A stretch of DNA of 64,000 nt from assembly GCF_963853765.1 (NCBI RefSeq), contig NC_088860.1, forward strand, positions 41,168,001 through 41,232,000, given 5' to 3'. This document shows positions 13,691 through 56,237 of the stretch, piece by piece. Positions within the stretch are counted from its first letter, which is position 1. Each line of letters opens with the position of its first letter. The notes beneath the pieces were generated by a model. That model was not told where the DNA came from, searched no databases, and saw only the letters and a program-made list of their open reading frames with translations. Position numbers and translations under genes: made by a program. This stretch comes from Magallana gigas (lineage: Eukaryota).

Positions 13691-13893
13691 TTCTAAAATG
13701 TAACCACACTCTTTGACTGTTATTCCAGATTTCGTTGTAGATTTTTACGTGCATCATTGTTGCATGCCATTGAATGGTATGCATTTAAAATTCTTAATTG
13801 TTGTTATTTTGCATGAATTATTGCGAACTGACTATTCGTGTAAAGTATATGCAAACCAATTGATTGTGTTCATGAAGTATTTTTACTTGTAAC

Positions 13894-14114
13894 TACTGTA
13901 ATTAGGGTAAATTTCGCCTCGTGTTATTTTCGCCTCCCCTTTTCTTCAATTGCAAACAGTTTAGCTTCGTCTTAAATACGCCCAGACATAGCTGTGTTTA
14001 AAAAAAGAATAATTTGAGCCAATGCAATTTGCCCAGGCTTAAATTAGCCCGTAGACAAGGAGGGCGAAATGGGCGAAAATAAAGCGGGGTGAATATTTCC
14101 TTGTATATACAGTA
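13894..14114. mobile_element. MITE, paralog of 1210-1434
   Basis: TACTGTA...TACAGTA ends at the matching position. Confidence 0.55.
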
Positions 14115-14583
14115 TATATAGACGAATATTCATATAAAAACATAATTTTTCATTATTAGATGTGGGATAAAAAGACATTGCAGAAAAAATTGATAACCCA
14201 CGTTGGCGGATTATCAATTTTTGGACAATGATCGCTACGTGCATACCTTCATAACCCGCATCGTTTTATTGTTACATCTTTTTTTTAAACAAAACGATTG
14301 ATTTGAAAGAGTAAGTAAAAACTAAATTATTGATAATGTACAACAGTAGATGCGGTAAAGGAATAGCCAAATCATCTTAAATGGGAATTGAAGTCTAAAA
14401 GCATCATCATTATTTATTAAAGTCCGTGATTTTTACCACGCTTTAGGTCTCAAGAAATCCACACAGATCAACCGATTGAACAGTTTGGTTCTCTGTCAGC
14501 ATTATCTTTTACGACAGAGGAACTAAACTACAGCCTAGATTGTTCCCCAGGGAGCCGAGTCCTCTCCCTCAGACCGGTCACTG

Positions 14584-15393
14584 ATGGATGTACCCGGGGT
14601 CATCACAGCTATAAATACAGGATATGAATATCTATGGGGTGTGACGTGTGTGAATGATACAGAAGTATGGATGCGTGGTAGTGACGACAAGATGAAACTA
14701 TTCAACCTGCAAGGAGAACTAGTGGAGTCTATCCAAACCAAGTCAGGGAACAGTCCAGCAAACATAGCAGTGACAAGGAGTGGGGATCTAGTTTATACTG
14801 ATTACCGTGATAGAACTGTGAACATAGTGAATAATACACAGATACAGACAGTGATTAGACTACGGGGGTGGATACCTCATGGTGTCTGTAGTACTTCCTC
14901 TGGTGACCTCCTGGTTGTCATGGACAGTGATGATTATGAACAAACAAAGGTTGTGCGTTACTCTGGCTCCAGAGAGAAACAAAGTATTCAGTACAACGAC
15001 AAAGGACAACCTCTCTATAAGTATTTATCTGGTCACATTAAACACATCAGTGAGAACAGGAACCTAGATATCTGTGTGTCAGACAATGGAGCCCGTGCAG
15101 TGGAGGTGGTCAATCAGGCCGGGAAACTCCGGTTTACCTACACTGGTCCTCCCTCTACAACCAAGGGATCATTCTATCCACAAGGCATCACAACAGACAG
15201 CAAGCTTCGGATCCTAACAGCAGACTGGGAAAACCACCGTATCCACATCCTGGATCAGGACGGACAGTTCCTCCGCTACATTGATAACTGTGATTTACAT
15301 TTCCCATGGGGTTTATGTGTGGACCCCAGAGACAACCTCTTTGTGACTGAGAGAGACACAGGTATAGTGAAGAAAATTCAATATTGCATGTAA
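14584..15393 (+). CDS. NHL-repeat cassette copy B2; NHL domain intact, +1 frameshift in the upstream linker
   Basis: 269-aa ORF; linker from 14430 ([24 protein letters not shown]) is out of frame by one extra G near 14550. Confidence 0.8.
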
Positions 15394-16487: not shown

Positions 16488-16639
16488 NNNNNNNNNNNNN
16501 NNNNNNNNNNNNNNNNNNNNNNNNNNNNNNNNNNNNNNNNNNNNNNNNNNNNNNNNNNNNNNNNNNNNNNNNNNNNNNNNNNNNNNNNNNNNNNNNNNNN
16601 NNNNNNNNNNNNNNNNNNNNNNNNNNNNNNNNNNNNNNN
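16488..16639. other. Assembly gap (152 N)
   Basis: N run. Confidence 1.
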
Positions 16640-17051
16640 AAGTTTTTTTTCTATTGGATGAAAACAAATTGTTGACTATTTTCATATAACATGTAGGTTT
16701 CCATGTGTATAATTATATTGCATGTCATCAAACTATGTGCGTTTCAAAACCAAACTTTTTCTGCAAACAATTTGTTTCTCTCAAATTACATGTAGATTGT
16801 CCATTCTTGCATGTATATTATATGTAAACAAAATGGCTGCGTTTATGTAATTGTCAATTACTATGTGTATTAAATGACTCAATATTCATATTACATATAA
16901 ACAAACTCTCTTCATCATTTGATGCATATAAGATAAGAGTTTATCTATAACATGTCAAACAGTCTTTGTTTTTTTACATGAAACAAGGTAATGGTCTCTA
17001 TATGTTTAACTTACATGTGGTTATCTGAAGAAACTTTTTGTTACATGTATT

Positions 17052-17789
17052 TATAACCAGTGAAATGACATCCATTTCACTTTTGATAACTTTTAGGCTA
17101 AGCATACATTTTCATAGTCTACTTTATTTTACTTTATTCTAATCTTATATGTTCCCATACTTAGCAATTCCTTATTGACATCTAAAGCATTCCTTATTAT
17201 TTATTTCTAAAGGTTGTCCAAGCTGTTGTTTACTTCTTAATCACCTAGAATATTTAGTGATTTCACAGTAATTGTTAATCTTTATTGTCAGTGACACTGC
17301 TCATGGCACTGGGCACTCATAGGTGTAAGTTAGGGTAAACAAAACCACTTTGACTTCTTCACATCAAAGGGATGACACTGATAACTTAATTATTTGATAA
17401 GCCCTAAGTGACAACTTTACCTTAGGCAATTCATAGCGAAATTTATTCTTGTACATGAGTTCTTCTAGAGAGAGTTAGCTTTGAGACTTCGGACTGAAAG
17501 GATGTAGGGCGAAGCTAGGAAATCATGTAGAGTGTTAGGAGACAAATTTCTAATTCATCTGTTAAGGCCCCCTCCTCTAAATTACAGTTAGGAACAAGAC
17601 TTGCTCATTAATGTTGTTACCTGCGTGTGTAGATTGGATTATTTAACATTCAATCTTTAATAAACATTTCTCATATCCTGCCATTTGGACTTTGTGCATT
17701 CTTGATTTACTTATTCCCCTTGAGCTTAATTCCCCAAATGAACGTGCACCACTGCCTAGTTATGTACCAGACATCCGGGCGTGGTCACA
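17052..17789 (+). mobile_element. Probable solo LTR (738 bp, 4-bp TSD TATT); mirror copy 25128-25865
   Basis: Missing from the paralogous flank near 3760; ends TATAACCA...GGGCGTGGTCACA; AATAAA near the 3' end. Confidence 0.6.
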
Positions 17790-18239
17790 TATTAATGACG
17801 AAGGTTAATGGACGTGTAGCACTCAATTCTTTACTAGCAAAGGAACGAGGCCACAAAGGGACTGAGGCCCATTACTTATAAAGAGGAGTGATACAGGTAT
17901 ATTAACCCAAGTAGAATTCAAATTGTTCTAGCTAATTATCATAACTTACCTTAAATCTTAAGAATTAGAGTAGTTGTGTGTGATTTTTTAACAGCCTTGT
18001 TTTCTCTGCTGAATGTTCAAAGCTTCACAAAATCCACATCCAAAATATCCAGGTTCTTGTTGGGTGTCTTTTCTTTGAGTGTTTAATTTCCTGATCTGAT
18101 CAGACATCTTCCTGAAAATGTATTTAGACATTGAGTATATGTTGTTGTTTTTATACATCATTATGCTATGTATGGATTTTGTGAGTTTTAATCAATTAAA
18201 CTTTAGTCAGAGAAATAATGTGTTGTGAATTAAATAATG

Positions 18240-18343
18240 AATAAGGAATCATTCTTTGAGTATAATGAGGTGATAATTTCGGTCGGGGCGTGATCAAATC
18301 CATTAAGCCCGAAGGGCTTTATGATAGATTTGATCACGCCCCG
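18240..18343. mobile_element. Long-palindrome element split by the BEL/Pao insertion; the rest is at 56238-56267 (and 21141-21170 inverted)
   Basis: Palindrome breaks after GCCCCG and resumes CCCCGACCGAAATTATC after the 3' LTR. Confidence 0.8.
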
Positions 18344-19103
18344 TGTAGTGGAACCAAGAGTTATCTTTCTTGATCTTGTATTATACAGTCTGAGAGTTAT
18401 TCCTCTTTATGTGGAACTCTTCTATGTTCAGTTTTTCACGCTGTGTACGTGCGGTCCCGCCGCAGTGCTACACATTGTCTATACCAACATATTCCATGTT
18501 TCATCCTTGTCCCCTCAAATTGTAAGTATCATATGCATTTAGATATATGAAATATTCATTTTATTTGTTGTTTTTGCCATGACATGTTTATATAAGCAAA
18601 CATAAGCACCCTCGTAATGACTGTTACTGTAGTAGGTTGTAGGCGCCATATTTTCTCGTGTTTACATTTGTTGATGTTAAAACATATAAGTATAACTTCA
18701 TTATTTATATGATTTACTGGTCATTAATAAGTACACAGCACACCTATAAAGTGTGAATTCTATGTTTATATTTTTCAATTAAATTATTTTCCCTTTTTTA
18801 CCTATATTCCATAATTTCCCTCGGGCTACTGTTTCAATACTGGGTGCACATTTTGGAATTCGTCTATTTTGATAATTGTCAATTTATTTCTTATGAGAAC
18901 TATGATATATATACATATATGATATAAATGTATTATTGTGTGAATTGTTAAAATGTCAGTTTGCATATTATTCCATGTATTTATAAATTGTTTATAATTT
19001 GTTTCAGCAATTTACCACTTCAGATCTACATCAGATCTACATTCAATAAAGATTACCAATAGTTATTGAATCTGGTTATACTTGCTGTTTTTCAAACAGT
19101 ACA
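18344..19103 (+). mobile_element. BEL/Pao LTR, variant alpha (760 bp)
   Basis: TGTAGTG...CAGTACA ends; matches 21171-21930, 23814-24573 and 55478-56237; preceded by CCCCG. Confidence 0.95.
18978..19050 (+). promoter_or_regulatory. Predicted LTR core promoter and poly(A) signal
   Basis: TATTTATAAA 18978-18987, Inr-like TCAG 19004-19007, AATAAA 19045-19050, in U3-R-U5 order; motif-based prediction only. Confidence 0.5.
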
Positions 19104-19128
19104 GTAAATTGAATTTGAGGGGACAAGG

Positions 19129-19445
19129 ATGAAACCTACACAGTTTCCACTTGTTGAACCTGATAGTGACAGAGAAGTCCGTCCAATCGATAGACCTGTA
19201 ATATGCTCACAAACTGATGTTACCATTACAACAACAGGATCTGATCTCATTACCAAGAAATTTGATCGATTTGATCGTTGGAGTTGTCTCATTACGGGCA
19301 TTGCTTGTCTCAAGCGAGTTTGCCGCAGGTTTAGAGCTTGTCGTGACCAGAAACCTATGCAACTTACCCGTTATGATGAAATTTGTGAAGCAGAGACCTT
19401 TGTCCTAAAACAGATTCAACAAGAATTCTTCTCTAAAGAGATAAA
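19129..19445 (+). pseudogene. BEL/Pao pol fragment (RNase H-integrase linker) cut by an inversion junction
   Basis: Matches 53620-53936, then switches to the reverse complement of 56238-57962. Confidence 0.9.
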
Positions 19446-21170
19446 TCTATAACTATAAAACAGAATTTTGCACCGTACATTGATTATAAGTCATATTTTA
19501 ATGTTTCATAAATAAGCTAAGCATAATTTGGTTTAGAATGATAAAAGTTATATAATAACGCATTTCAATTTTATTATTTTGAATTATTTACACTGTCATT
19601 AAATTGTCATTAGAATAAAAACATATTCGGTATGTTGCTTTAAAAAAAACCTTTTTGACTTCTTTTAACATTTCGTGATTACTATAACTATAAAATAGAA
19701 TTTCATAAATAAGCATAACCCGTCTCGGTGTAGAGTGATAAAAGTTACATAATAACGAATTTCAATGTTTTATTTTGAATATTTACACTGAACCATTTCC
19801 CCCCCCCCCCCCCCAGGGATCCCCTGACGATGAATTAAAGTAATTTTAGAAGGCCTATGGTAGTATTACTTCGAACTTTTCTGTACACGTGGGGCTTTTA
19901 AGATATCAAATATTAACCAAAAAAAGTTCTCAGTTGATTAAAGTATATTTGCATGTTTGCCAGAGGTTCCAACGCCTATTTACTGTAACTTAACTGTTAA
20001 TCATATACGTTTTGATTATCCTAGTTGGGGGGGGGGGGGTTCCAGATGATCTGACCAACCCTCCCCTCAAGATCTGCGCAGCGCACAAGCCGCAGGGATT
20101 TTTTTCATCCTGAATTTAATACATATTTTTGAAAAATTAAAAGCTAGTAATTGACTATAAATCAAATATGATAACTACACCAACTTTAATTTATTAATGT
20201 TTGTTTGAGTTAATTTTGAACAGGTAAATTCTTTGGGGGGGGGGGGGGGGTTACATTTCTAGGTTGGGTTCAGGATACAATTACGATAAGGTACTTGTCG
20301 TCTGGAGGTTGCAGAGGGATATTTTTTTAAAGGGTACTTTAAACATATAGCTTATATTTATATATCATTATGGATTATTTTAAATTTCAACAGCGTGCAG
20401 TGTTATTAAAAAAAATATATCCCCTGTGTGTTGATGTCATACATATGATATTTGTACTCAGCCACAGTGCCTTATAACCGTCTTTGCTAGCCAAGGGTTT
20501 TTGGTCCACTTTCCTCGGAGCGAAGATGCTAATAACAAAAACCCCAAATGTTTCTGATAAAGATAAAAGTTAATATATAAAATATTAAACATGTAAGCCC
20601 TTCAAAAATACGTTTTTTTCTTTGAATCATACAAACTTCTTTTAAACAAGATTATAACATAAAATGTCTATATTTCATGTTTCTTTGAATCAATACGACA
20701 TTCGTTTCAGTTGGATGGCATATATACGCGGATCGAGAAAGAATTCCTATGGCGATCCGAGTGATAAAGACGTTTTCCGGGAGGAGAGTCGATGGAGAGT
20801 GCGAGGCCTATTTTAGGTAACTTTACAATGTGGATTTAAGAAGTTTGAATTTTTTAGGGTAAGTTTGTCAGGAAAATCCCCTCCAGATCTACCACCAAGG
20901 GGATCAGTGGATGAAAAACTGGAATAAAAATTTAATCATTTATATATGATAAATAGATACATGTATATAATTTTGTATATTTACATTTTCCAGTGTCTTT
21001 GCCTGTGATAACACTACGTATCGATTTTGTACTATATAACCGATAATACAAATGACGCCAAATTGAGGCTCCATCGGGGTTTGCTTATTCATATTTAAAT
21101 ATTTAATCGTACGATGGCTCAAAATTATATAAATATAAGTAATAAGGAATCATGATAATTTCGGTCGGGG

Positions 21171-24100
21171 TGTACTGTTTGAAAAACAGCAAGTATAACC
21201 AGATTCAATAACTATTGGTAATCTTTATTGAATGTAGATCTGATGTAGATCTGAAGTGGTAAATTGCTGAAACAAATTATAAACAATTTATAAATACATG
21301 GAATAATATGCAAACTGACATTTTAACAATTCACACAATAATACATTTATATCATATATGTATATATATCATAGTTCTCATAAGAAATAAATTGACAATT
21401 ATCAAAATAGACGAATTCCAAAATGTGCACCCAGTATTGAAACAGTAGCCCGAGGGAAATTATGGAATATAGGTAAAAAAGGGAAAATAATTTAATTGAA
21501 AAATATAAACATAGAATTCACACTTTATAGGTGTGCTGTGTACTTATTAATGACCAGTAAATCATATAAATAATGAAGTTATACTTATATGTTTTAACAT
21601 CAACAAATGTAAACACGAGAAAATATGGCGCCTACAACCTACTACAGTAACAGTCATTACGAGGGTGCTTATGTTTGCTTATATAAACATGTCATGGCAA
21701 AAACAACAAATAAAATGAATATTTCATATATCTAAATGCATATGATACTTACAATTTGAGGGGACAAGGATGAAACATGGAATATGTTGGTATAGACAAT
21801 GTGTAGCACTGCGGCGGGACCGCACGTACACAGCGTGAAAAACTGAACATAGAAGAGTTCCACATAAAGAGGAATAACTCTCAGACTGTATAATACAAGA
21901 TCAAGAAAGATAACTCTTGGTTCCACTACACTCCCCGCCTGGCATCTTTGAGATGCCACTACTCATATGCATGCACAAAACATTTCAAAATTGTGATAAA
22001 CTAGTTGATAAATAATACATCTCGTGATCACTTGATACATGAATCATAATACAAGTCAATGTTTACAAATTCATTGTTAACAGTCCATTATTCACAGTCC
22101 ATAAGTTACAGTCCATTATTCACAGTCCATAAGTTACAGTTCACATCTAGTCACTGTTCACTTTCTATTAGCAACACGAGATCATGAATTGGTCGAATGT
22201 AAAATGTTGGTTTTCCTGCTCGAATAGTTCGCACAACAACTTTTCTCACGATTCCATCGTCACTTGGAAATACGCGGTCGATAATACCAGTTGGCCAGTT
22301 GTTCCGGTGCTCAGCGGGATCTTTCAACAGTACCACATCATCTACTTTAACGTTTCTGGTTTTGCTTTTCCACTTACGTCTACTTTGTAGGATAGATAGA
22401 TACTGCTTACGCCACTGATTCCAGAAAATATCTGCAAGGATTTGGACACGTTTCCATTGCGCTCTGTAAACGTCTTGTAGACTGAGTGAATCAGACACGA
22501 CTGGTAGGAAATCAACTTTACCGGTGAGAATCATAGTTGGTGTAAGAATCATTGGGTCATTTGGATCCGAAGGTATCGGTGCTATAGGTCTAGAGTTTAT
22601 GATGGCACAAACTTCACATAAAAATGTTGCTAATGTCTCATGTGTTAGAGGTTTACCACTAGATTCCAAAAGCATTGAATCGAGGATTTTCCTTGTCATT
22701 CCTATGACTCGCTCCCAGACACCACCCATATGGGAGGAATGTGGGACATTGAAAATCCAGGTGATGTAGGATTTGTCCAGGAACTGTTGAACTGGTCCCT
22801 CTTCTACTTTTATCGTGTTCACTCTCATTTCCTCAGCAGCTCCAATGAAATTGGTGCCTCGGTCAGATCTTATTATCTTCACTGGGCCACGGAGTGATAG
22901 AAATCTACGCAGTGCATTTATAAAACATGAACTCGACATCTCTTCAATAACCTCTATGTGAGCCGCTCTTGATGTTAAACAGGTAAACATCAGTCCCCAT
23001 CTCTTGCTGTTTGCAGCTCCTCCTCTAGTTCTGCGGGTACAGACTTCCCATGGTCCGAAGACATCAATTCCAACAGATGTGAAAGCTGGGCCTGGTGTGA
23101 TCCTGTCCTCTGGTAAGTCTGCCATCATCTGTGTTTCAAGGCCACGGCGAAGTTTTCGACAAGTCACGCAAGTGTGAATGAAAGATGAAATCATGCGCTT
23201 GCCTCCCAGGATCCAATAACCTGCCGTACGAAGTGCACCTTCAGTGAATAATCTCCCCTGATGTTTGACTTGCTCGTGAAAATGACGTATCAAAAGAACA
23301 GAGATATGACTGTTCTTGGGAAGAATAATTGGATTGATTTCCTTTGATGGTAAAATTCCAGCAGCTTTGTTCAATCTTCCACCAACACACATTAGTCCAT
23401 TTTCATCTAAGAATGGTGCAAGTGTGGATATACTTGTGTCTTTGTTCAAAGGTTTTCCAGACTTTAAACTGTTTATCTCTTTAGAGAAGAATTCTTGTTG
23501 AATCTGTTTTAGGACAAAGGTCTCTGCTTCACAAATTTCATCATAACGGGTAAGTTGCATAGGTTTCTGGTCACGACAAGCTCTAAACCTGCGGCAAACT
23601 CGCTTGAGACAAGCAATGCCCGTAATGAGACAACTCCAACGATCAAATCGATCAAATTTCTTGGTAATGAGATCAGATCCTGTTGTTGTAATGGTAACAT
23701 CAGTTTGTGAGCATATTACAGGTCTATCGATTGGACGGACTTCTCTGTCACTATCAGGTTCAACAAGTGGAAACTGTGTAGGTTTCATCCTTGTCCCCTC
23801 AAATTCAATTTACTGTACTGTTTGAAAAACAGCAAGTATAACCAGATTCAATAACTATTGGTAATCTTTATTGAATGTAGATCTGATGTAGATCTGAAGT
23901 GGTAAATTGCTGAAACAAATTATAAACAATTTATAAATACATGGAATAATATGCAAACTGACATTTTAACAATTCACACAATAATACATTTATATCATAT
24001 ATGTATATATATCATAGTTCTCATAAGAAATAAATTGACAATTATCAAAATAGACGAATTCCAAAATGTGCACCCAGTATTGAAACAGTAGCCCGAGGGA

Positions 24101-24573
24101 AATTATGGAATATAGGTAAAAAAGGGAAAATAATTTAATTGAAAAATATAAACATAGAATTCACACTTTATAGGTGTGCTGTGTACTTATTAATGACCAG
24201 TAAATCATATAAATAATGAAGTTATACTTATATGTTTTAACATCAACAAATGTAAACACGAGAAAATATGGCGCCTACAACCTACTACAGTAACAGTCAT
24301 TACGAGGGTGCTTATGTTTGCTTATATAAACATGTCATGGCAAAAACAACAAATAAAATGAATATTTCATATATCTAAATGCATATGATACTTACAATTT
24401 GAGGGGACAAGGATGAAACATGGAATATGTTGGTATAGACAATGTGTAGCACTGCGGCGGGACCGCACGTACACAGCGTGAAAAACTGAACATAGAAGAG
24501 TTCCACATAAAGAGGAATAACTCTCAGACTGTATAATACAAGATCAAGAAAGATAACTCTTGGTTCCACTACA
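21171..24573 (-). mobile_element. Internally deleted BEL/Pao element (3403 bp) with two LTRs, PPT and 5-bp TSD CCCCG
   Basis: LTRs 23814-24573 and 21171-21930; CGGGG at 21166-21170 and 24574-24578; gag, PR, RT and RH absent. Confidence 0.92.
22151..23788 (-). CDS. Integrase-only ORF of the deleted element (545 aa)
   Basis: HHCC zinc finger (HEQVKH...CVTC), GIDVFG, SDRGTNF, GVWER core and WKRVQ C-terminal domain. Confidence 0.85.
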   Translation of the reverse strand: MKPTQFPLVEPDSDREVRPIDRPVICSQTDVTITTTGSDLITKKFDRFDRWSCLITGIACLKRVCRRFRACRDQKPMQLTRYDEICEAETFVLKQIQQEFFSKEINSLKSGKPLNKDTSISTLAPFLDENGLMCVGGRLNKAAGILPSKEINPIILPKNSHISVLLIRHFHEQVKHQGRLFTEGALRTAGYWILGGKRMISSFIHTCVTCRKLRRGLETQMMADLPEDRITPGPAFTSVGIDVFGPWEVCTRRTRGGAANSKRWGLMFTCLTSRAAHIEVIEEMSSSCFINALRRFLSLRGPVKIIRSDRGTNFIGAAEEMRVNTIKVEEGPVQQFLDKSYITWIFNVPHSSHMGGVWERVIGMTRKILDSMLLESSGKPLTHETLATFLCEVCAIINSRPIAPIPSDPNDPMILTPTMILTGKVDFLPVVSDSLSLQDVYRAQWKRVQILADIFWNQWRKQYLSILQSRRKWKSKTRNVKVDDVVLLKDPAEHRNNWPTGIIDRVFPSDDGIVRKVVVRTIRAGKPTFYIRPIHDLVLLIESEQ

Positions 24574-26277
24574 CGGGGCGTGATCAAATCTATCATAAAG
24601 CCCTTCGGGCTTAATGGATTTGATCACGCCCCGACCGAAATTATCACCTCATTATACTCAAAGAATGATTCCTTATTCATTATTTAATTCACAACACATT
24701 ATTTCTCTGACTAAAGTTTAATTGATTAAAACTCACAAAATCCATACATAGCATAATGATGTATAAAAACAACAACATATACTCAATGTCTAAATACATT
24801 TTCAGGAAGATGTCTGATCAGATCAGGAAATTAAACACTCAAAGAAAAGACACCCAACAAGAACCTGGATATTTTGGATGTGGATTTTGTGAAGCTTTGA
24901 ACATTCAGCAGAGAAAACAAGGCTGTTAAAAAATCACACACAACTACTCTAATTCTTAAGATTTAAGGTAAGTTATGATAATTAGCTAGAACAATTTGAA
25001 TTCTACTTGGGTTAATATACCTGTATCACTCCTCTTTATAAGTAATGGGCCTCAGTCCCTTTGTGGCCTCGTTCCTTTGCTAGTAAAGAATTGAGTGCTA
25101 CACGTCCATTAACCTTCGTCATTAATATGTGACCACGCCCGGATGTCTGGTACATAACTAGGCAGTGGTGCACGTTCATTTGGGGAATTAAGCTCAAGGG
25201 GAATAAGTAAATCAAGAATGCACAAAGTCCAAATGGCAGGATATGAGAAATGTTTATTAAAGATTGAATGTTAAATAATCCAATCTACACACGCAGGTAA
25301 CAACATTAATGAGCAAGTCTTGTTCCTAACTGTAATTTAGAGGAGGGGGCCTTAACAGATGAATTAGAAATTTGTCTCCTAACACTCTACATGATTTCCT
25401 AGCTTCGCCCTACATCCTTTCAGTCCGAAGTCTCAAAGCTAACTCTCTCTAGAAGAACTCATGTACAAGAATAAATTTCGCTATGAATTGCCTAAGGTAA
25501 AGTTGTCACTTAGGGCTTATCAAATAATTAAGTTATCAGTGTCATCCCTTTGATGTGAAGAAGTCAAAGTGGTTTTGTTTACCCTAACTTACACCTATGA
25601 GTGCCCAGTGCCATGAGCAGTGTCACTGACAATAAAGATTAACAATTACTGTGAAATCACTAAATATTCTAGGTGATTAAGAAGTAAACAACAGCTTGGA
25701 CAACCTTTAGAAATAAATAATAAGGAATGCTTTAGATGTCAATAAGGAATTGCTAAGTATGGGAACATATAAGATTAGAATAAAGTAAAATAAAGTAGAC
25801 TATGAAAATGTATGCTTAGCCTAAAAGTTATCAAAAGTGAAATGGATGTCATTTCACTGGTTATAAATACATGTAACAAAAAGTTTCTTCAGATAACCAC
25901 ATGTAAGTTAAACATATAGAGACCATTACCTTGTTTCATGTAAAAAAACAAAGACTGTTTGACATGTTATAGATAAACTCTTATCTTATATGCATCAAAT
26001 GATGAAGAGAGTTTGTTTATATGTAATATGAATATTGAGTCATTTAATACACATAGTAATTGACAATTACATAAACGCAGCCATTTTGTTTACATATAAT
26101 ATACATGCAAGAATGGACAATCTACATGTAATTTGAGAGAAACAAATTGTTTGCAGAAAAAGTTTGGTTTTGAAACGCACATAGTTTGATGACATGCAAT
26201 ATAATTATACACATGGAAACCTACATGTTATATGAAAATAGTCAACAATTTGTTTTCATCCAATAGAAAAAAAACTT

Positions 26278-26420
26278 NNNNNNNNNNNNNNNNNNNNNNN
26301 NNNNNNNNNNNNNNNNNNNNNNNNNNNNNNNNNNNNNNNNNNNNNNNNNNNNNNNNNNNNNNNNNNNNNNNNNNNNNNNNNNNNNNNNNNNNNNNNNNNN
26401 NNNNNNNNNNNNNNNNNNNA
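26278..26420. other. Assembly gap (143 N), mirror of 16488-16639
   Basis: N run with the same flanks reverse-complemented. Confidence 1.
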
Positions 26421-42597: not shown

Positions 42598-42653
42598 TTT
42601 TCAGCTGATGTCACTGGTTGGAAGTTTTCTAGCTGGTGACGTATCGACGCTTC

Positions 42654-45231: not shown

Positions 45232-45252
45232 GAATTTACACACCAAGGAGAC

Positions 45253-45681
45253 ATGGCTACCGGAGGGCTCCCCTTACCACGGAACAGTGATTCCCAGAAC
45301 GAGATTGAAGAAACCAACACCTCTACCAAGGATAAACGTGATGTTATCTTGAGTGAAAAAGGACTCTTAGCATTTGAAGAAGAATGTTCAAAATATAAGA
45401 AACCTATATTCGAAACATGGGGGAAAGTCGAAAAATGCATTCTACGTGTGCAAAAATGTGACAGAAACATTGAACAATATCAAATCTTACAGAGTGATAT
45501 AGATGTAGTGGAACCAAGAGTTATCTCTCTTGATCTTGTATTGTGCAGTCTGAGAGTTATTCCTCTTTATGTGGAACTCTTCTATGTTCAGTTTTTCACG
45601 CTGTGTACGTGCGGTCCCGCCGCAGTGCTACACATTTTCTTTACCAACATATTCCATGTTTCATCCTTGTCCCCTCAAATT
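45253..45681 (+). mobile_element. Beta gag first 251 nt fused to the first 178 nt of an LTR
   Basis: ...GATATAGA|TGTAGTGGAACC at 45503/45504. Confidence 0.9.
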
Positions 45682-45689
45682 CAATTTAC

Positions 45690-46447
45690 TGTACTGTTTG
45701 AAAAACAGCAAGTATAACCATATTCAATAATTATTGGTAATCTTTATTGAATGTAGATCTGATGTAGATCTGAAGTGGTAAATTGCTGAAACAAATTATA
45801 AACAATTTATAAATACATGGGATAATATGCAAACTGACATTTTAACAATTCATACAATAATACATTTATATCATATATGTATATATATCATAGTTCTCAT
45901 AAGAAATAAATTGACAATTATCAAAATAGACGAATTCCAAAATGTGCACCCAGTATTGAAACAGTAGCCCGAGGGAAATTATGGAATATAGGTAAAAAAG
46001 GGAAAATAATTTAATTGAAAAATATAAACATAGAATTCACACTTTATTGGTGTGCTGTGTACTTATTAATGACCAGTAAATCATATAAATGATGAAGGTA
46101 TCCTATATGTTTAACATCAACAAATGTAAACACGAGAAAATATGGCGCCTACAACCTACTACAGTAACAGTCATTACGAGGGTGCTTATGTTTGCTTTTA
46201 TAAACATGTCATGGCAAAAAAAACAAATAAAATGAATATTTCATATATCTAAATGCATATGATACTTACAATTTGAGGGGACAAGGATGAAACATGGAAT
46301 ATGTTGGTAAAGAAAATGTGTAGCACTGCGGCGGGACCGCACGTACACAGCGTGAAAAACTGAACATAGAAGAGTTCCACATAAAGAGGAATAACTCTCA
46401 GACTGCACAATACAAGATCAAGAGAGATAACTCTTGGTTCCACTACA
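45690..46447 (-). mobile_element. Complete beta LTR (758 bp) at the palindrome centre
   Basis: Both termini present; two 1-nt deletions and over a dozen substitutions relative to alpha, counted by eye. Confidence 0.92.
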
Positions 46448-49356: not shown

Positions 49357-49392
49357 ACAGTACAGTAAATTGAATTTACACACCAAGGAAAC

Positions 49393-52300
49393 ATGGCTAC
49401 GGGAGGGCTCCCCTTACCACGGAACAGTGATTCCCAGAACGAGATTGAAGAAACCAACACCTCTATCAAGGATAAACGTGATGTTATCTTGAGTGAGAAA
49501 GGACTCTTAGCATTTGAAGAAGAATGTTCAAAATATAAAAAACCTATATTCGAAACATGGGGGAAAGTCGAAAAATGCATTCTACGTGTGCAAAAATGTG
49601 ACAGAAACATTGAACAATATCAAATCTTACAGAGTGATATAGAGAACACATTCAGTGAATTTCACAACAGTATTAAACAGTACCTTGTCTTTCTACAAAG
49701 ACACTCCAGAAGTGAACAAGGTAAAAGCGAGATGAAACGATGTACCGAGGACTTCGAGAAAGGAAAGTCAGTGGTTTACAAGGCCTTAGACAACATTAAA
49801 GCTGCAAAATTAGACCTCTTAGAAACAGCCTCAGAAATATCAACAACCAGCACTGAGAGGAAAAGAAGAAAAGAGCGGAAGTTGGAAATAATGAAAAAAG
49901 AAGCAGAGTTAAGAAAACAGAAACTTCGCCTTGAGGAAGATGAATCAATACGTATAGCTGAAATGAACAGAAAAAAGTGTGAGTTGGACATTGACTTAGA
50001 TTTACTGAAACAAGAACAGAGTGCTAGTGATGATGAACTTTCAATGGAGCAAGACCTTGCAGACATTGAGAGAGAGAGTTCAGGGGAACGAACACAGAAG
50101 TTTGTGGAAAACATCCCTTCCAATCCTGTTGATGTCCAGATACCCACAACTGAATCGCCTCATGTGCTATCTGAAATGGCCCTGCTTATGATTAAAAAGC
50201 AAATGCTTCCTGAACGTTTTTCAAACTTTGATGACTCGCCAGATTCGTACAATGCCTGGAAGGAAACATTTACCAATATTATCAGTGAACTAAAAGTTTC
50301 CTGTAATGAAGAACTTGAGTTAATGTTAAATAGACTCACTGGCAATTCCAAACTTACAGCAATTGGAATTCGCAATGCAAATCCTGGTAAACCTAAGGAA
50401 GCACTTCAAATAATCTGGAAAAGACTTGATGAGATGTACGGGAGACCAGAAATGATCGAAGCGTCGATACGTCACCAGCTAGAAAACTTCCGACCAGTGA
50501 CATCAGCTGAAAACAAGCGCCTGTATGACTTGTTAAACATTCTCATTAAGATAGAATCACTGATGGCCAATTCAACATTTTCTACAAGCCTATCGTATTT
50601 TAACTCGTCAATTGGAGTGAATCCTATCATCAACAAATTACCATTTCACCTGCAGGAAAAATGGATCGCCAAAGCCTCCAATTTCAAAAAGTTAAACAAA
50701 GTGCCGTTCCCACCATTTTCATATTTTGTGACATTTGTACGCGAAATGAGTGAAATCAGAAATGATCCGGCATTTGTATTCACCAACAGCCGACAACCAG
50801 CTCTCAAGAGACCGGTATACTCCAAAAAGTCTGAGGTGTCAACAGACAACAACAACAACACCCGCTGCCCATATCATAAGGCAGATCATAGCATCCATGA
50901 TTGTAGAGCCTTCCGTGCAAAACCGTTCTTTGAACGCAAGAACTTTTTGCAAAGTAAAAACATTTGTACTAGATGTTGCACCTCAACTAGTCATACAGCA
51001 AAAGACTGCCAAGTCAAAATCCAATGCACTGCTTGTGGGAGTGTTTATCATACGACAGCTTTGCATATAAACAAAGGTCCATCATCAAGCCCAAGCATGC
51101 ATGGCGGGGAGAAAATGTATAACTCATCTCTACAAACCATGAAGTCAGAAACAGACAACATATCGCCTGTACCTATGAAAGCTTCAACAAACACTAGTGT
51201 CAAGTGTACTACATTCTGTGGTGACCATTATCAAGGCAGATCATGCAGCAAAATTTTCCTTGTGGATGTATTTCACACAGACTGTCCTAACAACATGTAT
51301 CGTGTTTACGCAATCGTGGATGACCAATGCAACCAGTCTCTTGCATCTCCAGAACTATTTGATGCCTTGAACATTATGTCCTCACCCATTCATTACACTT
51401 TGACAACATGTATGGGAAAGACAGCCCAAAATGGTCGGCAAGCACATAGTATGAAGTTACGATCATTGGACACAGCTGTGACAATGGACCTTCCTCTTCT
51501 GATGGAATGTGATGACATCCCTAACGAAACCTCTGAAATTCCTACACCAGAAGTTGCTAAGAGCTACCCTCACCTTCTCAGAATTGCATCTAGTATACCT
51601 GAGTTTGATGTGAATTCAAAAATACAGCTCCTTATTGGTAGAGACTTGATTGAGGCCCATCACATTGAAGAGCAGATCACTGGACCTCGAGGGGAACCAT
51701 TCGCTCAAAGACTTAGTCTTGGTTGGGCTATAATTGGTGAAGTTTGTCTCGGTAAACTTCATAGAAGAACCTCCGTGAATGTCAACAAAGTGTCTATTCT
51801 CAATGATGGTAGAGTTACATGCAGTCAACCTTGTCAGAACAACATTGACGTGAAAGAGCAAACACTTGTGTCTAACTATATAATTGGTGAGCGTGACTTT
51901 CAATTTCATGGTGAAGATGTCTTTATGAAGACCCCTGAAGATGATTGTATTGGTTTATCGGTAGAAGACAGACTATTCCTAAAGTTGATGGATAGAACAT
52001 TCACTAAAGACAAGGACGGCATGTGGACTGTACCTCTTCCTTTTCGAGAGAACCAACCTGATCTTCCTAACAACAGACCTCAGGCATTACATCGAGCTCA
52101 GATACTACACAACAGTTTACAGAAAGATACAGAAAAGAAGAGACAGTTTGTGAAATTCATGGAGAAAGTTCTAAACAGTGGAGCAGCAGAAGTTGCGCCA
52201 CCTCCAACAAGCACAGGTTGCTGGTACCTACCTTTGTTTGGCGTTCGTAACCCAAAGAAACCAGATCAAATAAGAGGCGTTTTTGATTCGTCGGCTAAGT

Positions 52301-55257
52301 ATGGTGGAGTTTCCCTCAATTCAGTACTCATGTCTGGTCCAGACATGATCAACAGCCTTCTTGGGATCTTGCTTCGTTTTAGGAAGGATGAGGTGGCGAT
52401 GGCAGCAGATATAGAGCAGATGTTTTACCGATTTCGTGTTGATGAAAACCACCGCAATTACCTACGCTTCTTTTGGTATAAAGAAAACAACCCAGATGAC
52501 ATCATGATAGAGTACAGAATGACTTCACATGTATTCGGCAACAGTCCGTCGCCTGCTATTGCATCTTATGGACTCCTTAAGACTGTCGAACACGCTGATC
52601 GAGATGTGAAAAACTTTGTACATCATAACTTCTACGTTGATGACGGGTTAATCTCTTTACCAAATGAATCAGATGCTATCAGCCTGATGAAGCGCACTCA
52701 GTCAACCATGAAACAGGAAGGTCAGATTCGTCTTCACAAAATCACGTCCAACAAACAAGCTGTGATGGACGCTTTTGATGTCAGTGATCATGGAGAACAG
52801 TTGAAAGAAATAGATAGTGATGACATGATACACAGATCTCTTGGACTTTGTTGGAGACTGAAGGATGATACTTTTGTGTTTACAGTACCTACTGAAGAGA
52901 AACCTTTTACTCGTCGCGGTCTGCTCTCAACTGTAAACAGCCTATTCGACCCATTAGGTTTCATATCACCAATCATCATCAGCGGTAAAATACTTCTCCG
53001 AGAATGCACACCTGAAGGAGTTGACTGGGATGAACCATTACCTGTCAATAATCTTCAAAAGTGGAAGGAGTGGCAATCGTCTCTTCACTGTCTCAGTGAT
53101 ATCGCCATTCCCCGTATGATGTCTCACACCTCTGTTAGTTCAGCTCAGACAGCAGAAGTTCACATATTCTCAGATGCTTCAGAAAAGGCAATAGCAGCAT
53201 CAGCATATATAAAAACTGTAAGTGATGGACAAACAAGCGTTCGATTCATCATGGGAAGAAGCAAGTTAGCACCTCTTAATGGCCACACCATTCCTCGCCT
53301 AGAATTGTGTGGAGCTGTCTTAGCAACGGAACTCGCAGAGATCATATCTGTACAACTTGGCATCCCATTGCAAACCATGAGATTTTACACAGATAGCAGA
53401 GTTGTGTTAGGCTACATTGGTAATAGGACTCGAAGATTTTACACCTATGTAAGCAACCGAGTTGATCGTATTCTACGAATATCTAATGCCAATCAATGGA
53501 ACTTCATTTCCAGTGAAAAGAATCCTGCAGATTCTTGTACAAGATGCAACACTAATGTGATCAACATTATGCGGTTACCATGGATTACTGGTCCACAATG
53601 GTTGTGTGATGTGACAGAAATGAAACCTACACAGTTTCCACTTGTTGAACCTGATAGTGACAGAGAAGTCCGTCCAATCGATAGACCTGTAATATGCTCA
53701 CAAACTGATGTTACCATTACAACAACAGGATCTGATCTCATTACCAAGAAATTTGATCGATTTGATCGTTGGAGTTGTCTCATTACGGGCATTGCTTGTC
53801 TCAAGCGAGTTTGCCGCAGGTTTAGAGCTTGTCGTGACCAGAAACCTATGCAACTTACCCGTTATGATGAAATTTGTGAAGCAGAGACCTTTGTCCTAAA
53901 ACAGATTCAACAAGAATTCTTCTCTAAAGAGATAAACAGTTTAAAGTCTGGAAAACCTTTGAACAAAGACACAAGTATATCCACACTTGCACCATTCTTA
54001 GATGAAAATGGACTAATGTGTGTTGGTGGAAGATTGAACAAAGCTGCTGGAATTTTACCATCAAAGGAAATCAATCCAATTATTCTTCACAAGAACAGTC
54101 ATATCTCTGTTCTTTTGATACGTCATTTTCACGAGCAAGTCAAACATCAGGGGAGATTATTCACTGAAGGTGCACTTCGTACGGCAGGTTATTGGATCCT
54201 GGGAGGCAAGCGCATGATTTCATCTTTCATTCACACTTGCGTGACTTGTCGAAAACTTCGCCGTGGCCTTGAAACACAGATGATGGCAGACTTACCAGAG
54301 GACAGGATCACACCAGGCCCAGCTTTCACATCTGTTGGAATTGATGTCTTCGGACCATGGGAAGTCTGTACCCGCAGAACTAGAGGAGGAGCTGCAAACA
54401 GCAAGAGATGGGGACTGATGTTTACCTGTTTAACATCAAGAGCGGCTCACATAGAGGTTATTGAAGAGATGTCGAGTTCATGTTTTATAAATGCACTGCG
54501 TAGATTTCTATCACTCCGTGGCCCAGTGAAGATAATAAGATCTGACCGAGGCACCAATTTCATTGGAGCTGCTGAGGAAATGAGAGTGAACACGATAAAA
54601 GTAGAAGAGGGACCAGTTCAACAGTTCCTGGACAAATCCTACATCACCTGGATTTTCAATGTCCCACATTCCTCCCATATGGGTGGTGTCTGGGAGCGAG
54701 TCATAGGAATGACAAGGAAAATCCTCGATTCAATGCTTTTGGAATCTAGTGGTAAACCTCTAACACATGAGACATTAGCAACATTTTTATGTGAAGTTTG
54801 TGCCATCATAAACTCTAGACCTATAGCACCGATACCTTCGGATCCAAATGACCCAATGATTCTTACACCAACTATGATTCTCACCGGTAAAGTTGATTTC
54901 CTACCAGTCGTGTCTGATTCACTCAGTCTACAAGACGTTTACAGAGCGCAATGGAAACGTGTCCAAATCCTTGCAGATATTTTCTGGAATCAGTGGCGTA
55001 AGCAGTATCTATCTATCCTACAAAGTAGACGTAAGTGGAAAAGCAAAACCAGAAACGTTAAAGTAGATGATGTGGTACTGTTGAAAGATCCCGCTGAGCA
55101 CCGGAACAACTGGCCAACTGGTATTATCGACCGCGTATTTCCAAGTGACGATGGAATCGTGAGAAAAGTTGTTGTGCGAACTATTCGAGCAGGAAAACCA
55201 ACATTTTACATTCGACCAATTCATGATCTCGTGTTGCTAATAGAAAGTGAACAGTGA
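49393..55257 (+). CDS. Intact BEL/Pao gag-pol polyprotein (1954 aa)
   Basis: One ORF in Gag-PR-RT-RH-IN order: three CCHC-type knuckles, YAIVDDQ protease motif, YVDD, FSDAS, HHCC, DVFG/SDRGTNF/WER; no stops or frameshifts. Confidence 0.96.
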   Translation: MATGGLPLPRNSDSQNEIEETNTSIKDKRDVILSEKGLLAFEEECSKYKKPIFETWGKVEKCILRVQKCDRNIEQYQILQSDIENTFSEFHNSIKQYLVFLQRHSRSEQGKSEMKRCTEDFEKGKSVVYKALDNIKAAKLDLLETASEISTTSTERKRRKERKLEIMKKEAELRKQKLRLEEDESIRIAEMNRKKCELDIDLDLLKQEQSASDDELSMEQDLADIERESSGERTQKFVENIPSNPVDVQIPTTESPHVLSEMALLMIKKQMLPERFSNFDDSPDSYNAWKETFTNIISELKVSCNEELELMLNRLTGNSKLTAIGIRNANPGKPKEALQIIWKRLDEMYGRPEMIEASIRHQLENFRPVTSAENKRLYDLLNILIKIESLMANSTFSTSLSYFNSSIGVNPIINKLPFHLQEKWIAKASNFKKLNKVPFPPFSYFVTFVREMSEIRNDPAFVFTNSRQPALKRPVYSKKSEVSTDNNNNTRCPYHKADHSIHDCRAFRAKPFFERKNFLQSKNICTRCCTSTSHTAKDCQVKIQCTACGSVYHTTALHINKGPSSSPSMHGGEKMYNSSLQTMKSETDNISPVPMKASTNTSVKCTTFCGDHYQGRSCSKIFLVDVFHTDCPNNMYRVYAIVDDQCNQSLASPELFDALNIMSSPIHYTLTTCMGKTAQNGRQAHSMKLRSLDTAVTMDLPLLMECDDIPNETSEIPTPEVAKSYPHLLRIASSIPEFDVNSKIQLLIGRDLIEAHHIEEQITGPRGEPFAQRLSLGWAIIGEVCLGKLHRRTSVNVNKVSILNDGRVTCSQPCQNNIDVKEQTLVSNYIIGERDFQFHGEDVFMKTPEDDCIGLSVEDRLFLKLMDRTFTKDKDGMWTVPLPFRENQPDLPNNRPQALHRAQILHNSLQKDTEKKRQFVKFMEKVLNSGAAEVAPPPTSTGCWYLPLFGVRNPKKPDQIRGVFDSSAKYGGVSLNSVLMSGPDMINSLLGILLRFRKDEVAMAADIEQMFYRFRVDENHRNYLRFFWYKENNPDDIMIEYRMTSHVFGNSPSPAIASYGLLKTVEHADRDVKNFVHHNFYVDDGLISLPNESDAISLMKRTQSTMKQEGQIRLHKITSNKQAVMDAFDVSDHGEQLKEIDSDDMIHRSLGLCWRLKDDTFVFTVPTEEKPFTRRGLLSTVNSLFDPLGFISPIIISGKILLRECTPEGVDWDEPLPVNNLQKWKEWQSSLHCLSDIAIPRMMSHTSVSSAQTAEVHIFSDASEKAIAASAYIKTVSDGQTSVRFIMGRSKLAPLNGHTIPRLELCGAVLATELAEIISVQLGIPLQTMRFYTDSRVVLGYIGNRTRRFYTYVSNRVDRILRISNANQWNFISSEKNPADSCTRCNTNVINIMRLPWITGPQWLCDVTEMKPTQFPLVEPDSDREVRPIDRPVICSQTDVTITTTGSDLITKKFDRFDRWSCLITGIACLKRVCRRFRACRDQKPMQLTRYDEICEAETFVLKQIQQEFFSKEINSLKSGKPLNKDTSISTLAPFLDENGLMCVGGRLNKAAGILPSKEINPIILHKNSHISVLLIRHFHEQVKHQGRLFTEGALRTAGYWILGGKRMISSFIHTCVTCRKLRRGLETQMMADLPEDRITPGPAFTSVGIDVFGPWEVCTRRTRGGAANSKRWGLMFTCLTSRAAHIEVIEEMSSSCFINALRRFLSLRGPVKIIRSDRGTNFIGAAEEMRVNTIKVEEGPVQQFLDKSYITWIFNVPHSSHMGGVWERVIGMTRKILDSMLLESSGKPLTHETLATFLCEVCAIINSRPIAPIPSDPNDPMILTPTMILTGKVDFLPVVSDSLSLQDVYRAQWKRVQILADIFWNQWRKQYLSILQSRRKWKSKTRNVKVDDVVLLKDPAEHRNNWPTGIIDRVFPSDDGIVRKVVVRTIRAGKPTFYIRPIHDLVLLIESEQ

Positions 55258-55467: not shown

Positions 55468-55477
55468 AGGCGGGGAG
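55468..55477 (+). promoter_or_regulatory. Polypurine tract AGGCGGGGAG
   Basis: Directly abuts the TG of the 3' LTR. Confidence 0.85.
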
Positions 55478-56237
55478 TGTAGTGGAACCAAGAGTTATCT
55501 TTCTTGATCTTGTATTATACAGTCTGAGAGTTATTCCTCTTTATGTGGAACTCTTCTATGTTCAGTTTTTCACGCTGTGTACGTGCGGTCCCGCCGCAGT
55601 GCTACACATTGTCTATACCAACATATTCCATGTTTCATCCTTGTCCCCTCAAATTGTAAGTATCATATGCATTTAGATATATGAAATATTCATTTTATTT
55701 GTTGTTTTTGCCATGACATGTTTATATAAGCAAACATAAGCACCCTCGTAATGACTGTTACTGTAGTAGGTTGTAGGCGCCATATTTTCTCGTGTTTACA
55801 TTTGTTGATGTTAAAACATATAAGTATAACTTCATTATTTATATGATTTACTGGTCATTAATAAGTACACAGCACACCTATAAAGTGTGAATTCTATGTT
55901 TATATTTTTCAATTAAATTATTTTCCCTTTTTTACCTATATTCCATAATTTCCCTCGGGCTACTGTTTCAATACTGGGTGCACATTTTGGAATTCGTCTA
56001 TTTTGATAATTGTCAATTTATTTCTTATGAGAACTATGATATATATACATATATGATATAAATGTATTATTGTGTGAATTGTTAAAATGTCAGTTTGCAT
56101 ATTATTCCATGTATTTATAAATTGTTTATAATTTGTTTCAGCAATTTACCACTTCAGATCTACATCAGATCTACATTCAATCAAGATTACCAATAGTTAT
56201 TGAATCTGGTTATACTTGCTGTTTTTCAAACAGTACA
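55478..56237 (+). mobile_element. 3' LTR (alpha), followed by TSD CCCCG
   Basis: 760 bp; AATAAA reads AATCAA in this copy. Confidence 0.95.

What the first reader, a model, noticed from the sequence alone, without database searches (positions are those of the whole stretch)
18978..19116. Candidate tRNA-independent, self-priming BEL/Pao retrotransposon
Seen: the LTR ends ...CAGTACA and is followed directly by GTAAATTG, with no TGG-type tRNA primer-binding site anywhere in the 28-nt leader (49365-49392). The exact complement CAATTTAC lies at 19008-19015, beside an Inr-like TCAG, 21 nt after the TATTTATAAA box and ahead of AATAAA, so at the predicted RNA 5' end. The pairing ends exactly on the first base after the LTR, so a primer cut there would start cDNA at the terminal TGT. 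The motif is kept in alpha and beta LTRs. Established: S. pombe Tf1 primes by pairing its first 11 nt to the PBS, with RNase H cleavage. Inference: this element may do the same; I know no such report for BEL/Pao. Caveats: only 8 bp in AT-rich DNA, the start site is predicted, and a second partial match (TCAATTTA, 18879-18886) exists.
Basis: partly seen in the sequence, partly recalled or inferred. Interest (0 to 1): 0.8.

Follow-up and report, generated by a model that had tools for sequence, protein, structure and literature searches.

The report
Retrotransposon self-primer assembled by splicing
This oyster BEL/Pao retrotransposon, and 15 related families tested from molluscs, a brachiopod, a priapulid and a fish, have no tRNA primer site; the site matches a piece of the element's own RNA that, in 13 of the 16 families, becomes continuous only once an intron inside the LTR is spliced out.

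Summary
The LTR ends ...CAGTACA, GTAAATTG follows it directly, the leader has no TGG site, and CAATTTAC lies at 19008-19015.

The "Inr-like TCAG" is in fact a 3' splice site. The LTR holds a GT..AG intron (18522-19007), and a spliced 919->1405 joint is seen in RNA runs. Splicing joins AAATT to CAATTTAC. That product is the exact reverse complement of the first 13 nt after the LTR (GTAAATTGAATTT).

The same design appears in all 16 BEL/Pao families examined: 7 oyster families plus Saccostrea, Pinctada, Argopecten, Mytilus, Patella, Littorina, Lingula, Priapulus and the fish Odontesthes. Each has an 11-14 nt perfect Watson-Crick match that starts at the first base after the LTR. Every family has its own sequence, and no pair is G.U. 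In 13 families the match is split by an LTR intron. In 3 the LTR lacks the intron and the match is continuous.

Best reading: Tf1-like self-priming, new for BEL/Pao, in which the primer is assembled by splicing. The transcription start, the cleavage step and the priming itself are inferred and have not been shown.

The parts
18339..18343 (.). Left copy of the 5-bp target-site duplication CCCCG. The right copy is at 56238-56242.
   Evidence: the flanks read ...CGCCCCG|TGTAGTGG and ...CAGTACA|CCCCGACC.
18344..19103 (+). 760-nt LTR, TGT...ACA. This is the copy that contains the finding.
   Evidence: Further copies lie at 55478-56237 (+), and at 21171-21930, 23814-24573 and 45690-46447 (-).
18517..18521 (+). 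AAATT, the last 5 nt of LTR exon 1 and the 5' half of the self-primer.
   Evidence: Together with 19008-15 it forms the reverse complement of 19104-19116.
18522..19007 (+). Spliceosomal-type intron inside the LTR (486 nt). Donor CAAATT|GTAAGTAT, acceptor TTTGTTTCAG|C.
   Evidence: One search shows a GT..AG joint 919->1405 on L009 in an RNA contig (depth 53, against 25 for the intron) and in one raw RNA read. One search finds the joined form absent from the genome. One search shows donor and acceptor kept in all copies.
19008..19015 (+). The predicted cleavage and primer 3' end lie after C19015.
19045..19050 (+). AATAAA poly(A) signal in exon 2 (R region).
   Evidence: An AATAAA or ATTAAA lies in exon 2 of most of the families listed.
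19083..19101 (+). Predicted 8-bp hairpin at the end of U5, 2 nt before the LTR edge. It resembles the U5-IR stem-loop; its support is weak.
   Evidence: z = -1.3 here. A similar terminal hairpin appears in about 10 of 16 families.
19104..19116 (+). Primer-binding site GTAAATTGAATTT (13 nt), starting at the first base after the LTR.
19117..19136 (+). Aberrant continuation of the site. The reverse complement of exon 1 runs on (32 nt in all from 19104), then the sequence jumps to pol position 4256 through an 8-nt microhomology.
   Evidence: Twins lie on the - strand at 23782-23813 and 45658-45689. A similar case is seen in L013.
49365..49392 (+). Leader in front of the long reading frame. The site occupies 49365-49377. 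Only the last ~11 nt of an LTR precede it here.
49393..55257 (+). gag-pol reading frame (1954 aa) of BEL/Pao type.
   Evidence: Peptidase_A17 1.6e-45, DUF5641, RVT_1, Integrase_H2C2.
55468..55477 (+). Polypurine tract AGGCGGGGAG.
   Evidence: The same ...GACGGGGAG|TGT context is seen in the relatives.
55478..56237 (+). 3' LTR. Intron 55656-56141; primer halves 55651-55655 and 56142-56149.

Best explanation
The element primes its own reverse transcription, as Tf1 does, but the primer is put together by splicing. Its LTR contains a canonical GT-AG intron. Removing the intron joins the last 3-6 nt of a short upstream exon to the first 6-8 nt of the downstream exon, which is the R region. The joined 11-14 nt (AAAUU|CAAUUUAC in this family) pair perfectly with the first 11-14 nt after U5.

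Inferred steps: a cut after ...UUAC, by the element's RNase H as in Tf1, leaves a 3'-OH facing the last base of U5. From there minus-strand DNA starts, and this fixes the LTR edge. After the first strand transfer, the unspliced 3' LTR copy restores the intron and the primer region. Plus-strand synthesis then copies the primer back into the site, which keeps the match perfect.

If the 3' copy is also spliced, the progeny carry intron-less LTRs. Such lineages exist.
For: (1) In 16 of 16 families the first 11-14 nt after the LTR are the exact reverse complement of a segment of the family's own LTR. Positions 1-11 are 100% Watson-Crick, with 3-4 pair types at positions 7-11 and no G.U pair.

(2) In 13 families the segment is interrupted by GT(A/G)AG...Y-tract-YAG introns of 110-486 nt. 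Shuffled sites reach the observed length in 0-16 of 2000 trials per family.

(3) The pairing always ends on the first base after the LTR. The LTR edges are fixed by the 3' LTR and by 5-bp target duplications.

(4) The spliced joint is seen in RNA: a contig at depth 53 against 25 for the intron, plus one raw read with GT..AG ends. It is absent from the genome.

(5) The LTR of family F7 equals the F4 LTR minus exactly the intron. Patella and Littorina also carry the contiguous form.

(6) The duplex is part of the minimum-energy fold of the spliced leader in all 12 families folded, with mean pair probability 0.66-0.99.

(7) There is no TGG site. The sites differ between families, so no single tRNA fits them all, and the 19 tRNAs sampled pair with at most 6 nt.
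Against: No biochemical step has been observed. Cleavage, the primer's 3'-OH and the primer-cDNA junction are all inferred.

The transcription start is unmapped, because read depth was too low.

Splicing evidence in RNA exists for one family only. It rests on one contig and one read, and it does not say whether the 5' or the 3' LTR copy was spliced.

Sense poly(A)+ coverage of the intron is near zero in run X21. That raises the question of how intron-containing LTRs are passed on if the 3' copy is also spliced efficiently.

Three F1 copies carry a mismatch at pair 12.

The host tRNA set was only sampled.
Confidence: 0.78

Rival explanations
1. Transcription starts at the TCAG just before CAATTTAC, and the unspliced first 8 nt of the RNA pair with the site, exactly as in Tf1. 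The intron is irrelevant.
For: The 8-bp pairing exists without splicing. In this family a TATA-like box lies 21 nt upstream. In run X21, sense coverage resumes near the acceptor.
Against: In all 13 intron-bearing families the complement continues for 3-6 more nt precisely at the end of the upstream exon. That would be inexplicable if the RNA began at the acceptor. The YAG with its pyrimidine tract is used as a splice acceptor. TATA-like boxes lie at inconsistent distances in other families. Intron-less LTRs carry the joined sequence.
Confidence: 0.05
2. The pairing is a structural RNA element, for example one that controls splicing, poly(A) site use, packaging or dimerisation. Reverse transcription would then be primed by something else, such as an unidentified tRNA fragment or another host RNA.
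For: The site begins GT(A/G/T)AA in all families and looks like a 5' splice site. The primer segment (...YUUAC|C) resembles the 5' end of U1 snRNA (own knowledge). A role in masking a U1-binding site is therefore conceivable. The tRNA set was incomplete.
Against: The duplex abuts the LTR edge to the base in 16 of 16 families. That is the signature of a primer 3' end. Not one G.U pair occurs among about 190 pairs, which fits templated copying of the primer rather than selection on an RNA helix. The sites vary between families, so no shared host primer fits. Nothing else in the short leaders resembles a primer site.
Confidence: 0.12
3. The primer acts in trans or comes from the 3' LTR. The spliced junction that pairs with the site would belong to a second, co-packaged spliced RNA, or to the spliced 3' LTR of the same RNA, not to the 5' end.
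For: Aberrant copies carry the site followed by 11 to more than 170 further nt complementary to exon 1 and U3 (19117-19136; 45658 leftwards; L013). In those events the primer RNA therefore reached well upstream of the junction. The RNA contig with the joint has at least 30 nt of upstream exon.
Against: Those copies are rare products and lie in a region that is probably mis-assembled. A CA dinucleotide, typical of start sites, lies within 2 nt of the start of the complement in 15 of 16 families, which favours a primer that begins at the RNA 5' end. This rival is a variant of the best explanation, not a contradiction of it.
Confidence: 0.2

Closest known systems
Tf1 / Tf2 / Tj1 self-priming (fission-yeast Ty3/gypsy elements) and the Tf1/sushi group
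   Same: There is no tRNA site. The site directly after U5 pairs with an upstream part of the element's own RNA (11 nt in Tf1). The primer is freed by a cut at the end of the duplex, and a stem-loop in U5 may assist (PMC4600332 and the papers of Levin and Lin cited there).
   Different: The superfamily differs: this is BEL/Pao, with Peptidase_A17 and DUF5641. In 13 of 16 families the primer sequence is not contiguous in the DNA and has to be joined by splicing an LTR intron. Whether it sits at the very 5' end of the RNA is unknown. The duplex is 11-14 bp.
Predicted self-priming in plant Tcn1 (Ty3/gypsy) and TAR / Houba / Osr-1 (Ty1/copia) lineages
   Same: Self-priming was inferred from sequence complementarity between the LTR and the primer site (PMC6317226).
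   Different: The complement there is contiguous, the hosts are plants, and the superfamilies differ. No intron is involved.
Canonical BEL/Pao (Belpaoviridae) as described by ICTV
   Same: Same gene content and order, LTRs with TG..CA ends, a polypurine tract and 5-bp target duplications.
   Different: ICTV states that replication is primed by a host tRNA (Arg or Gly) through an 18-nt site (PMC8742986). None of the 16 families here has such a site.
Elements without a recognisable primer site: bivalve TRIMs and GalEa copia elements with a conserved hairpin site
   Same: These are mollusc or other invertebrate LTR elements for which no tRNA site could be found and for which internal inverted repeats were noted (PMC6934838).
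   Different: There the repeats lie inside the internal domain and no mechanism was established. Here the partner lies in the LTR, abuts the LTR edge and is split by an intron.

Membership tests
BEL/Pao LTR retrotransposons (Belpaoviridae) | Polyprotein with a Pao-type peptidase (PF05380), reverse transcriptase, integrase and a DUF5641 tail | tested here: met
   Peptidase_A17 1.6e-45; DUF5641 9.3e-24; RVT_1 and Integrase_H2C2 are weaker hits; thousands of relatives with the same Pfam pattern.
BEL/Pao LTR retrotransposons (Belpaoviridae) | LTRs with TG...CA ends, a polypurine tract before the 3' LTR, and a 5-bp target-site duplication | tested here: met
   (CCCCG here; ATTAT, CTTCC, GTTAT, CAATA and others in relatives).
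BEL/Pao LTR retrotransposons (Belpaoviridae) | Primer-binding site complementary to the 3' end of a host tRNA (ICTV profile, PMC8742986) | tested here: not met
   No family has TGG next to the LTR. The sites differ between families. The 19 sampled host tRNAs pair with at most 6 nt (the tRNA set is incomplete).
Tf1-type self-primed retroelements | The site immediately 3' of U5 is complementary to an upstream segment of the element's own transcript | tested here: met
   11-14 nt perfect in 16 of 16 families, with covariation. In 13 families this holds only after intron removal.
Tf1-type self-primed retroelements | The complementary segment is the very 5' end of the mRNA | tested here: inconclusive
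   Reads were too few to map starts. A CA lies within 2 nt upstream of the complement in 15 of 16 families. Against this, aberrant copies extend at least 24 nt further into exon 1.
Tf1-type self-primed retroelements | RNase H-dependent cut of the RNA duplex that creates the primer 3' end | not testable with these tools
   This needs biochemistry. Only the position of the LTR edge implies a 3' end after ...UUAC.
Tf1-type self-primed retroelements | U5-IR-like stem-loop next to the site | tested here: inconclusive
   a terminal hairpin is predicted in about 10 of 16 families, but z-scores run from +0.8 to -2.5.
Tf1-type self-primed retroelements | Membership of the Tf1/sushi clade of Ty3/gypsy | tested here: not met
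   BEL/Pao domains. The element works like Tf1 but is not a relative.
Spliceosomal (GT-AG) intron | GT(A/G)AG donor, pyrimidine tract plus YAG acceptor, spliced form present in RNA and absent from DNA | tested here: met
   (consensus sites in 13 families). (joint in RNA for this family). (0 genomic hits for the joined form). (precise intron loss in F7).

The most novel reading that the evidence does not exclude
Splicing licenses reverse transcription. Exon 1 would be a 3-6 nt micro-exon that begins at the cap, so the whole 11-14 nt 5' end of the spliced RNA is the primer, as in Tf1, and an unspliced RNA cannot prime.

The site (GTAAG/GTAAA...) would also act as a U1-binding pseudo-donor that silences the poly(A) signal of the 5' LTR. 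The primer, which mimics the U1 5' end, would displace U1 once the RNA is in the particle.
Probability: 0.25. Interest if true: 0.95.

Novelty: new variant of a known kind. Interest (0 to 1): 0.9.

Why it matters
Self-priming was known or predicted for Ty3/gypsy (Tf1/sushi, Tcn1) and for one copia lineage. BEL/Pao elements are described as tRNA-primed (PMC8742986). I found no report of self-priming in BEL/Pao, and none of a primer that must be spliced together.

If it is correct:
- All three LTR-retrotransposon superfamilies include self-primers. That bears on the old question of whether hairpin or self-priming came before tRNA priming (PMC3601003).
- A spliceosomal intron inside an LTR would be part of the replication machinery. 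This would link nuclear splicing to the start of cDNA synthesis, a control point with no counterpart in retrovirus biology that I know of.
- The feature is old and widespread, found in molluscs, a brachiopod, a priapulid and a teleost.
- Annotation pipelines that look for a tRNA site will score these abundant elements as lacking one.
- Intron-less and intron-bearing LTR lineages offer a natural experiment on what the intron contributes.

Tried and rejected
1. tRNA primer. The variety of sites between families makes a shared tRNA untenable anyway.

2. Start-site mapping. Read laying on L009:600-3700 gave too little depth, and no "begin" places were reported. The Logan transcript-like contig L087 starts inside R at a tandem repeat and says nothing about the 5' end.

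3. A "fossil" primer-cDNA junction at 45660-45710. I first read AAATT|CAATTTAC|TGTACTG as a preserved primer-cDNA joint. One search showed it is simply the reverse complement of every normal LTR/site edge. Only the continuation of the complement into exon 1 is informative, and a microhomology-mediated DNA rearrangement could also produce it.

4. The window's perfect palindromes as evidence of snap-back cDNA. They include N runs and flanking DNA, and the whole block shares one target duplication. Haplotype mis-assembly is the likelier cause.

5. G.U-extended 8-bp pairing in F5 and F6. This was superseded by the spliced 13-bp pairing.

6. An alternative F2 donor (TTTAAAT|GTGCTA, 13 nt). I rejected it in favour of the donor homologous to those of F1 and Saccostrea (CTCAAAAT|GTAAGA, 12 nt).

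7. TGGCTAC... at the gag start as a distant tRNA site. It lies 28 nt from the LTR and does not look like an acceptor stem.

8. Argopecten L080 at first looked like an exception. Its 3' LTR is truncated, and an unbiased search found the split complement at the true LTR end.

Full report
**What is at the coordinates.** A 760-nt LTR (18344-19103, TGT...ACA) ends ...CAGTACA and is followed at once by GTAAATTG. The same edge precedes the 1954-aa reading frame at 49365. The 28-nt leader has no TGG. CAATTTAC lies at 19008-19015, after TCAG and before AATAAA (19045-19050). The reading frame is BEL/Pao: Peptidase_A17 at 1.6e-45, plus DUF5641, RVT_1 and an integrase zinc domain. The genome is an oyster's; the best protein hits are named Crassostrea/Magallana gigas. 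It holds about a dozen copies of this family (F1), and each copy with a full 5' LTR has it joined directly to GTAAATTGAATTT. The 8-mer by itself is weak evidence: 12 in the window against about 5 expected.

**Covariation.** A search with gag found many other BEL/Pao families in the same genome. In six of them (33-62% gag identity) the 7-8 nt after a pyrimidine-rich ...YAG in the LTR are the exact complement of the first 7-8 nt after the LTR, and the sequence differs in each family. Examples: CCTTTTAC with GTAAAAGG, CTTCTTAC with GTAAGAAG, TTTTTTAC with GTAAAAAA. In two families the LTR edges were fixed by the 3' LTR and by 5-bp target duplications.

**The turn: an intron.** Raw RNA reads and RNA contigs laid on a full copy (L009) gave little depth. 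They did show one joint, 919->1405, which skips 485 nt and has GT..AG ends. It appears in an RNA-run contig at depth 53 (the intron contig has depth 25) and in one raw read. In window coordinates the donor is CAAATT|GTAAGTAT (intron from 18522) and the acceptor is TTTGTTTCAG|CAATTTAC (exon from 19008). The joined form does not occur in the genome (0 hits), so the joint comes from splicing. Splicing produces AAATT|CAATTTAC, the exact reverse complement of the first 13 nt after the LTR.

**Generality.** The same holds in every family I could examine. The oyster families give 12-14 nt when a consensus donor in the LTR is joined to the YAG acceptor. Whole elements fetched from other species through related polyproteins show the split complement in Saccostrea (12 nt), Pinctada (13), Argopecten (11), Mytilus (11), the brachiopod Lingula (11), the priapulid Priapulus (11) and the fish Odontesthes (11). 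Introns are 110-486 nt long.

Three families have intron-less LTRs in which the complement is contiguous: Patella (11 nt), Littorina (13 nt, with the duplex running on into U5) and oyster F7. The F7 LTR aligns to the F4 LTR at positions 1-266 and 608-733, so it lacks exactly the intron.

Over all 16 families, pairs 1-11 counted from the LTR edge are 100% Watson-Crick, with three or four pair types at positions 7-11 and no G.U pair. Shuffled sites reach the observed length in 0-16 of 2000 trials per family. In the predicted fold of the spliced leader, the duplex is part of the minimum-energy structure in all 12 families folded.

**Mechanism.**
- Shown: the split complement exists; it abuts the LTR edge; it covaries; the intron is spliced in RNA in this family; intron-less LTR lineages exist.
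- Inferred by analogy with Tf1, where the 5' segment of the mRNA primes after an RNase H cut (PMC4600332 and references there): the spliced RNA folds so that the joined 11-14 nt pair with the site. A cut after ...UUAC gives the 3'-OH, and cDNA starts on the last base of U5.
- Further inference: because the cut removes the primer from the template, everything upstream of it (the first 8 nt of exon 2, the intron, exon 1 and U3) has to be copied from the 3' LTR copy after strand transfer. An element can therefore splice its 5' copy and still pass on the intron, provided the 3' copy stays unspliced. If the 3' copy is spliced too, the progeny are intron-less, as in F7, Patella and Littorina.
- The perfect, wobble-free match and its abrupt end fit a site that is re-copied from the primer at each cycle, as retroviral sites are re-copied from the tRNA (established knowledge of retroviral plus-strand strong-stop synthesis).

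**Open points.**
- The transcription start is unknown. A CA dinucleotide lies within 2 nt upstream of the start of the complement in 15 of 16 families, which would make exon 1 only 3-6 nt long. Against this, rare copies carry the site followed by 11 to more than 170 further nt complementary to exon 1 and U3 (19117-19136; 45658 leftwards; L013), so in those events the primer RNA reached further upstream.
- In the stranded run X21, sense coverage of the intron is close to zero while the internal region is covered. This suggests efficient splicing and leaves open how unspliced 3' copies are kept for packaging.
- A hairpin at the end of U5 is predicted in about 10 of 16 families but is not significant.

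**Caveats on the window.** The block 18344-56237 sits between one pair of target duplications (CCCCG). It contains perfect palindromes up to 7.8 kb long, some of which include N runs and flanking DNA. This is probably haplotype mis-assembly, so I use junctions from this block only as supporting evidence. The main evidence comes from other loci and other genomes.

**Literature.** The ICTV profile states that BEL/Pao elements are tRNA-primed (PMC8742986). Self-priming is documented or predicted for Tf1/sushi, Tcn1 and TAR (PMC4600332, PMC6317226). The large BEL/Pao survey does not discuss primer sites (PMC3118150). Full-text searches found no report of BEL/Pao self-priming or of a spliced primer. 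The library is incomplete, so priority cannot be guaranteed.

Noticed in passing
window 16498-26419 and 37887-54064: Perfect (100%) inverted repeats of 2.9-7.8 kb. Some include N runs (16488-16639, 26278-26419) and DNA flanking the element. The whole block 18344-56237 is bounded by a single CCCCG target duplication. This looks like haplotypes of one insertion site (a 3.4-kb internally deleted form and a longer form) stitched together, rather than a real structure.
   Followed up: partly
window 44791-45689: Composite arrangement: LTR 1-443, then leader and gag nt 2-279 (joined through the microhomology TAAATT), then LTR 1-178 spliced to CAATTTAC. It looks like a product of template switching during reverse transcription.
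   Followed up: partly
window 49286-49364: The long reading frame is not preceded by an LTR. It is preceded by a 71-nt gag fragment (element nt 1081-1152) joined to the last ~11 nt of the LTR. Upstream of that lies an inverted copy of the pol 3' end.
   Followed up: no
L011 (G000:C7:17025200-17025264): Tandem duplication of about 43 nt covering the end of U5 plus the first nucleotides of the primer site. It may be a slip at the start of cDNA synthesis.
   Followed up: no
all 16 families: The site always starts GT(A/G/T)AA, like a 5' splice donor, and the primer segment ...YUUAC|C resembles the 5' end of U1 snRNA (own knowledge). The site might bind U1 and silence the poly(A) signal that lies 40-150 nt upstream in the 5' LTR. 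This is an idea only.
   Followed up: no
L081 (Littorina saxatilis) 3540-3875: Here the complement runs on for 13 more nt into U5 (26 bp in all), so the predicted cut would lie inside a long duplex. The 5' LTR also carries a 60-nt insertion that forms a 22-bp inverted repeat around an AATAAA.
   Followed up: partly
L009:741-877 (= first ~137 nt of the LTR): RNA reads pile up here (up to ~100x) but carry six fixed differences and other sequence on both sides. A diverged copy of the LTR start is part of some well-expressed transcript elsewhere in the genome.
   Followed up: no
G000:C6:42917682-42956338 and C3:27432031-27471694: Long tandem arrays of identical tRNA genes spaced about 2.3 kb and 1.8 kb apart (Lys, Ala, Arg, and a Met-Thr-Lys unit), seen while collecting tRNAs.
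   Followed up: no
window 1-2655, 9979-10643, 13209-15393 and 11205-12384: An unrelated repeat family (75-97% identical copies, each with a ~268-aa reading frame) and a tandem array with a period of about 165 nt. Neither was examined.
   Followed up: no
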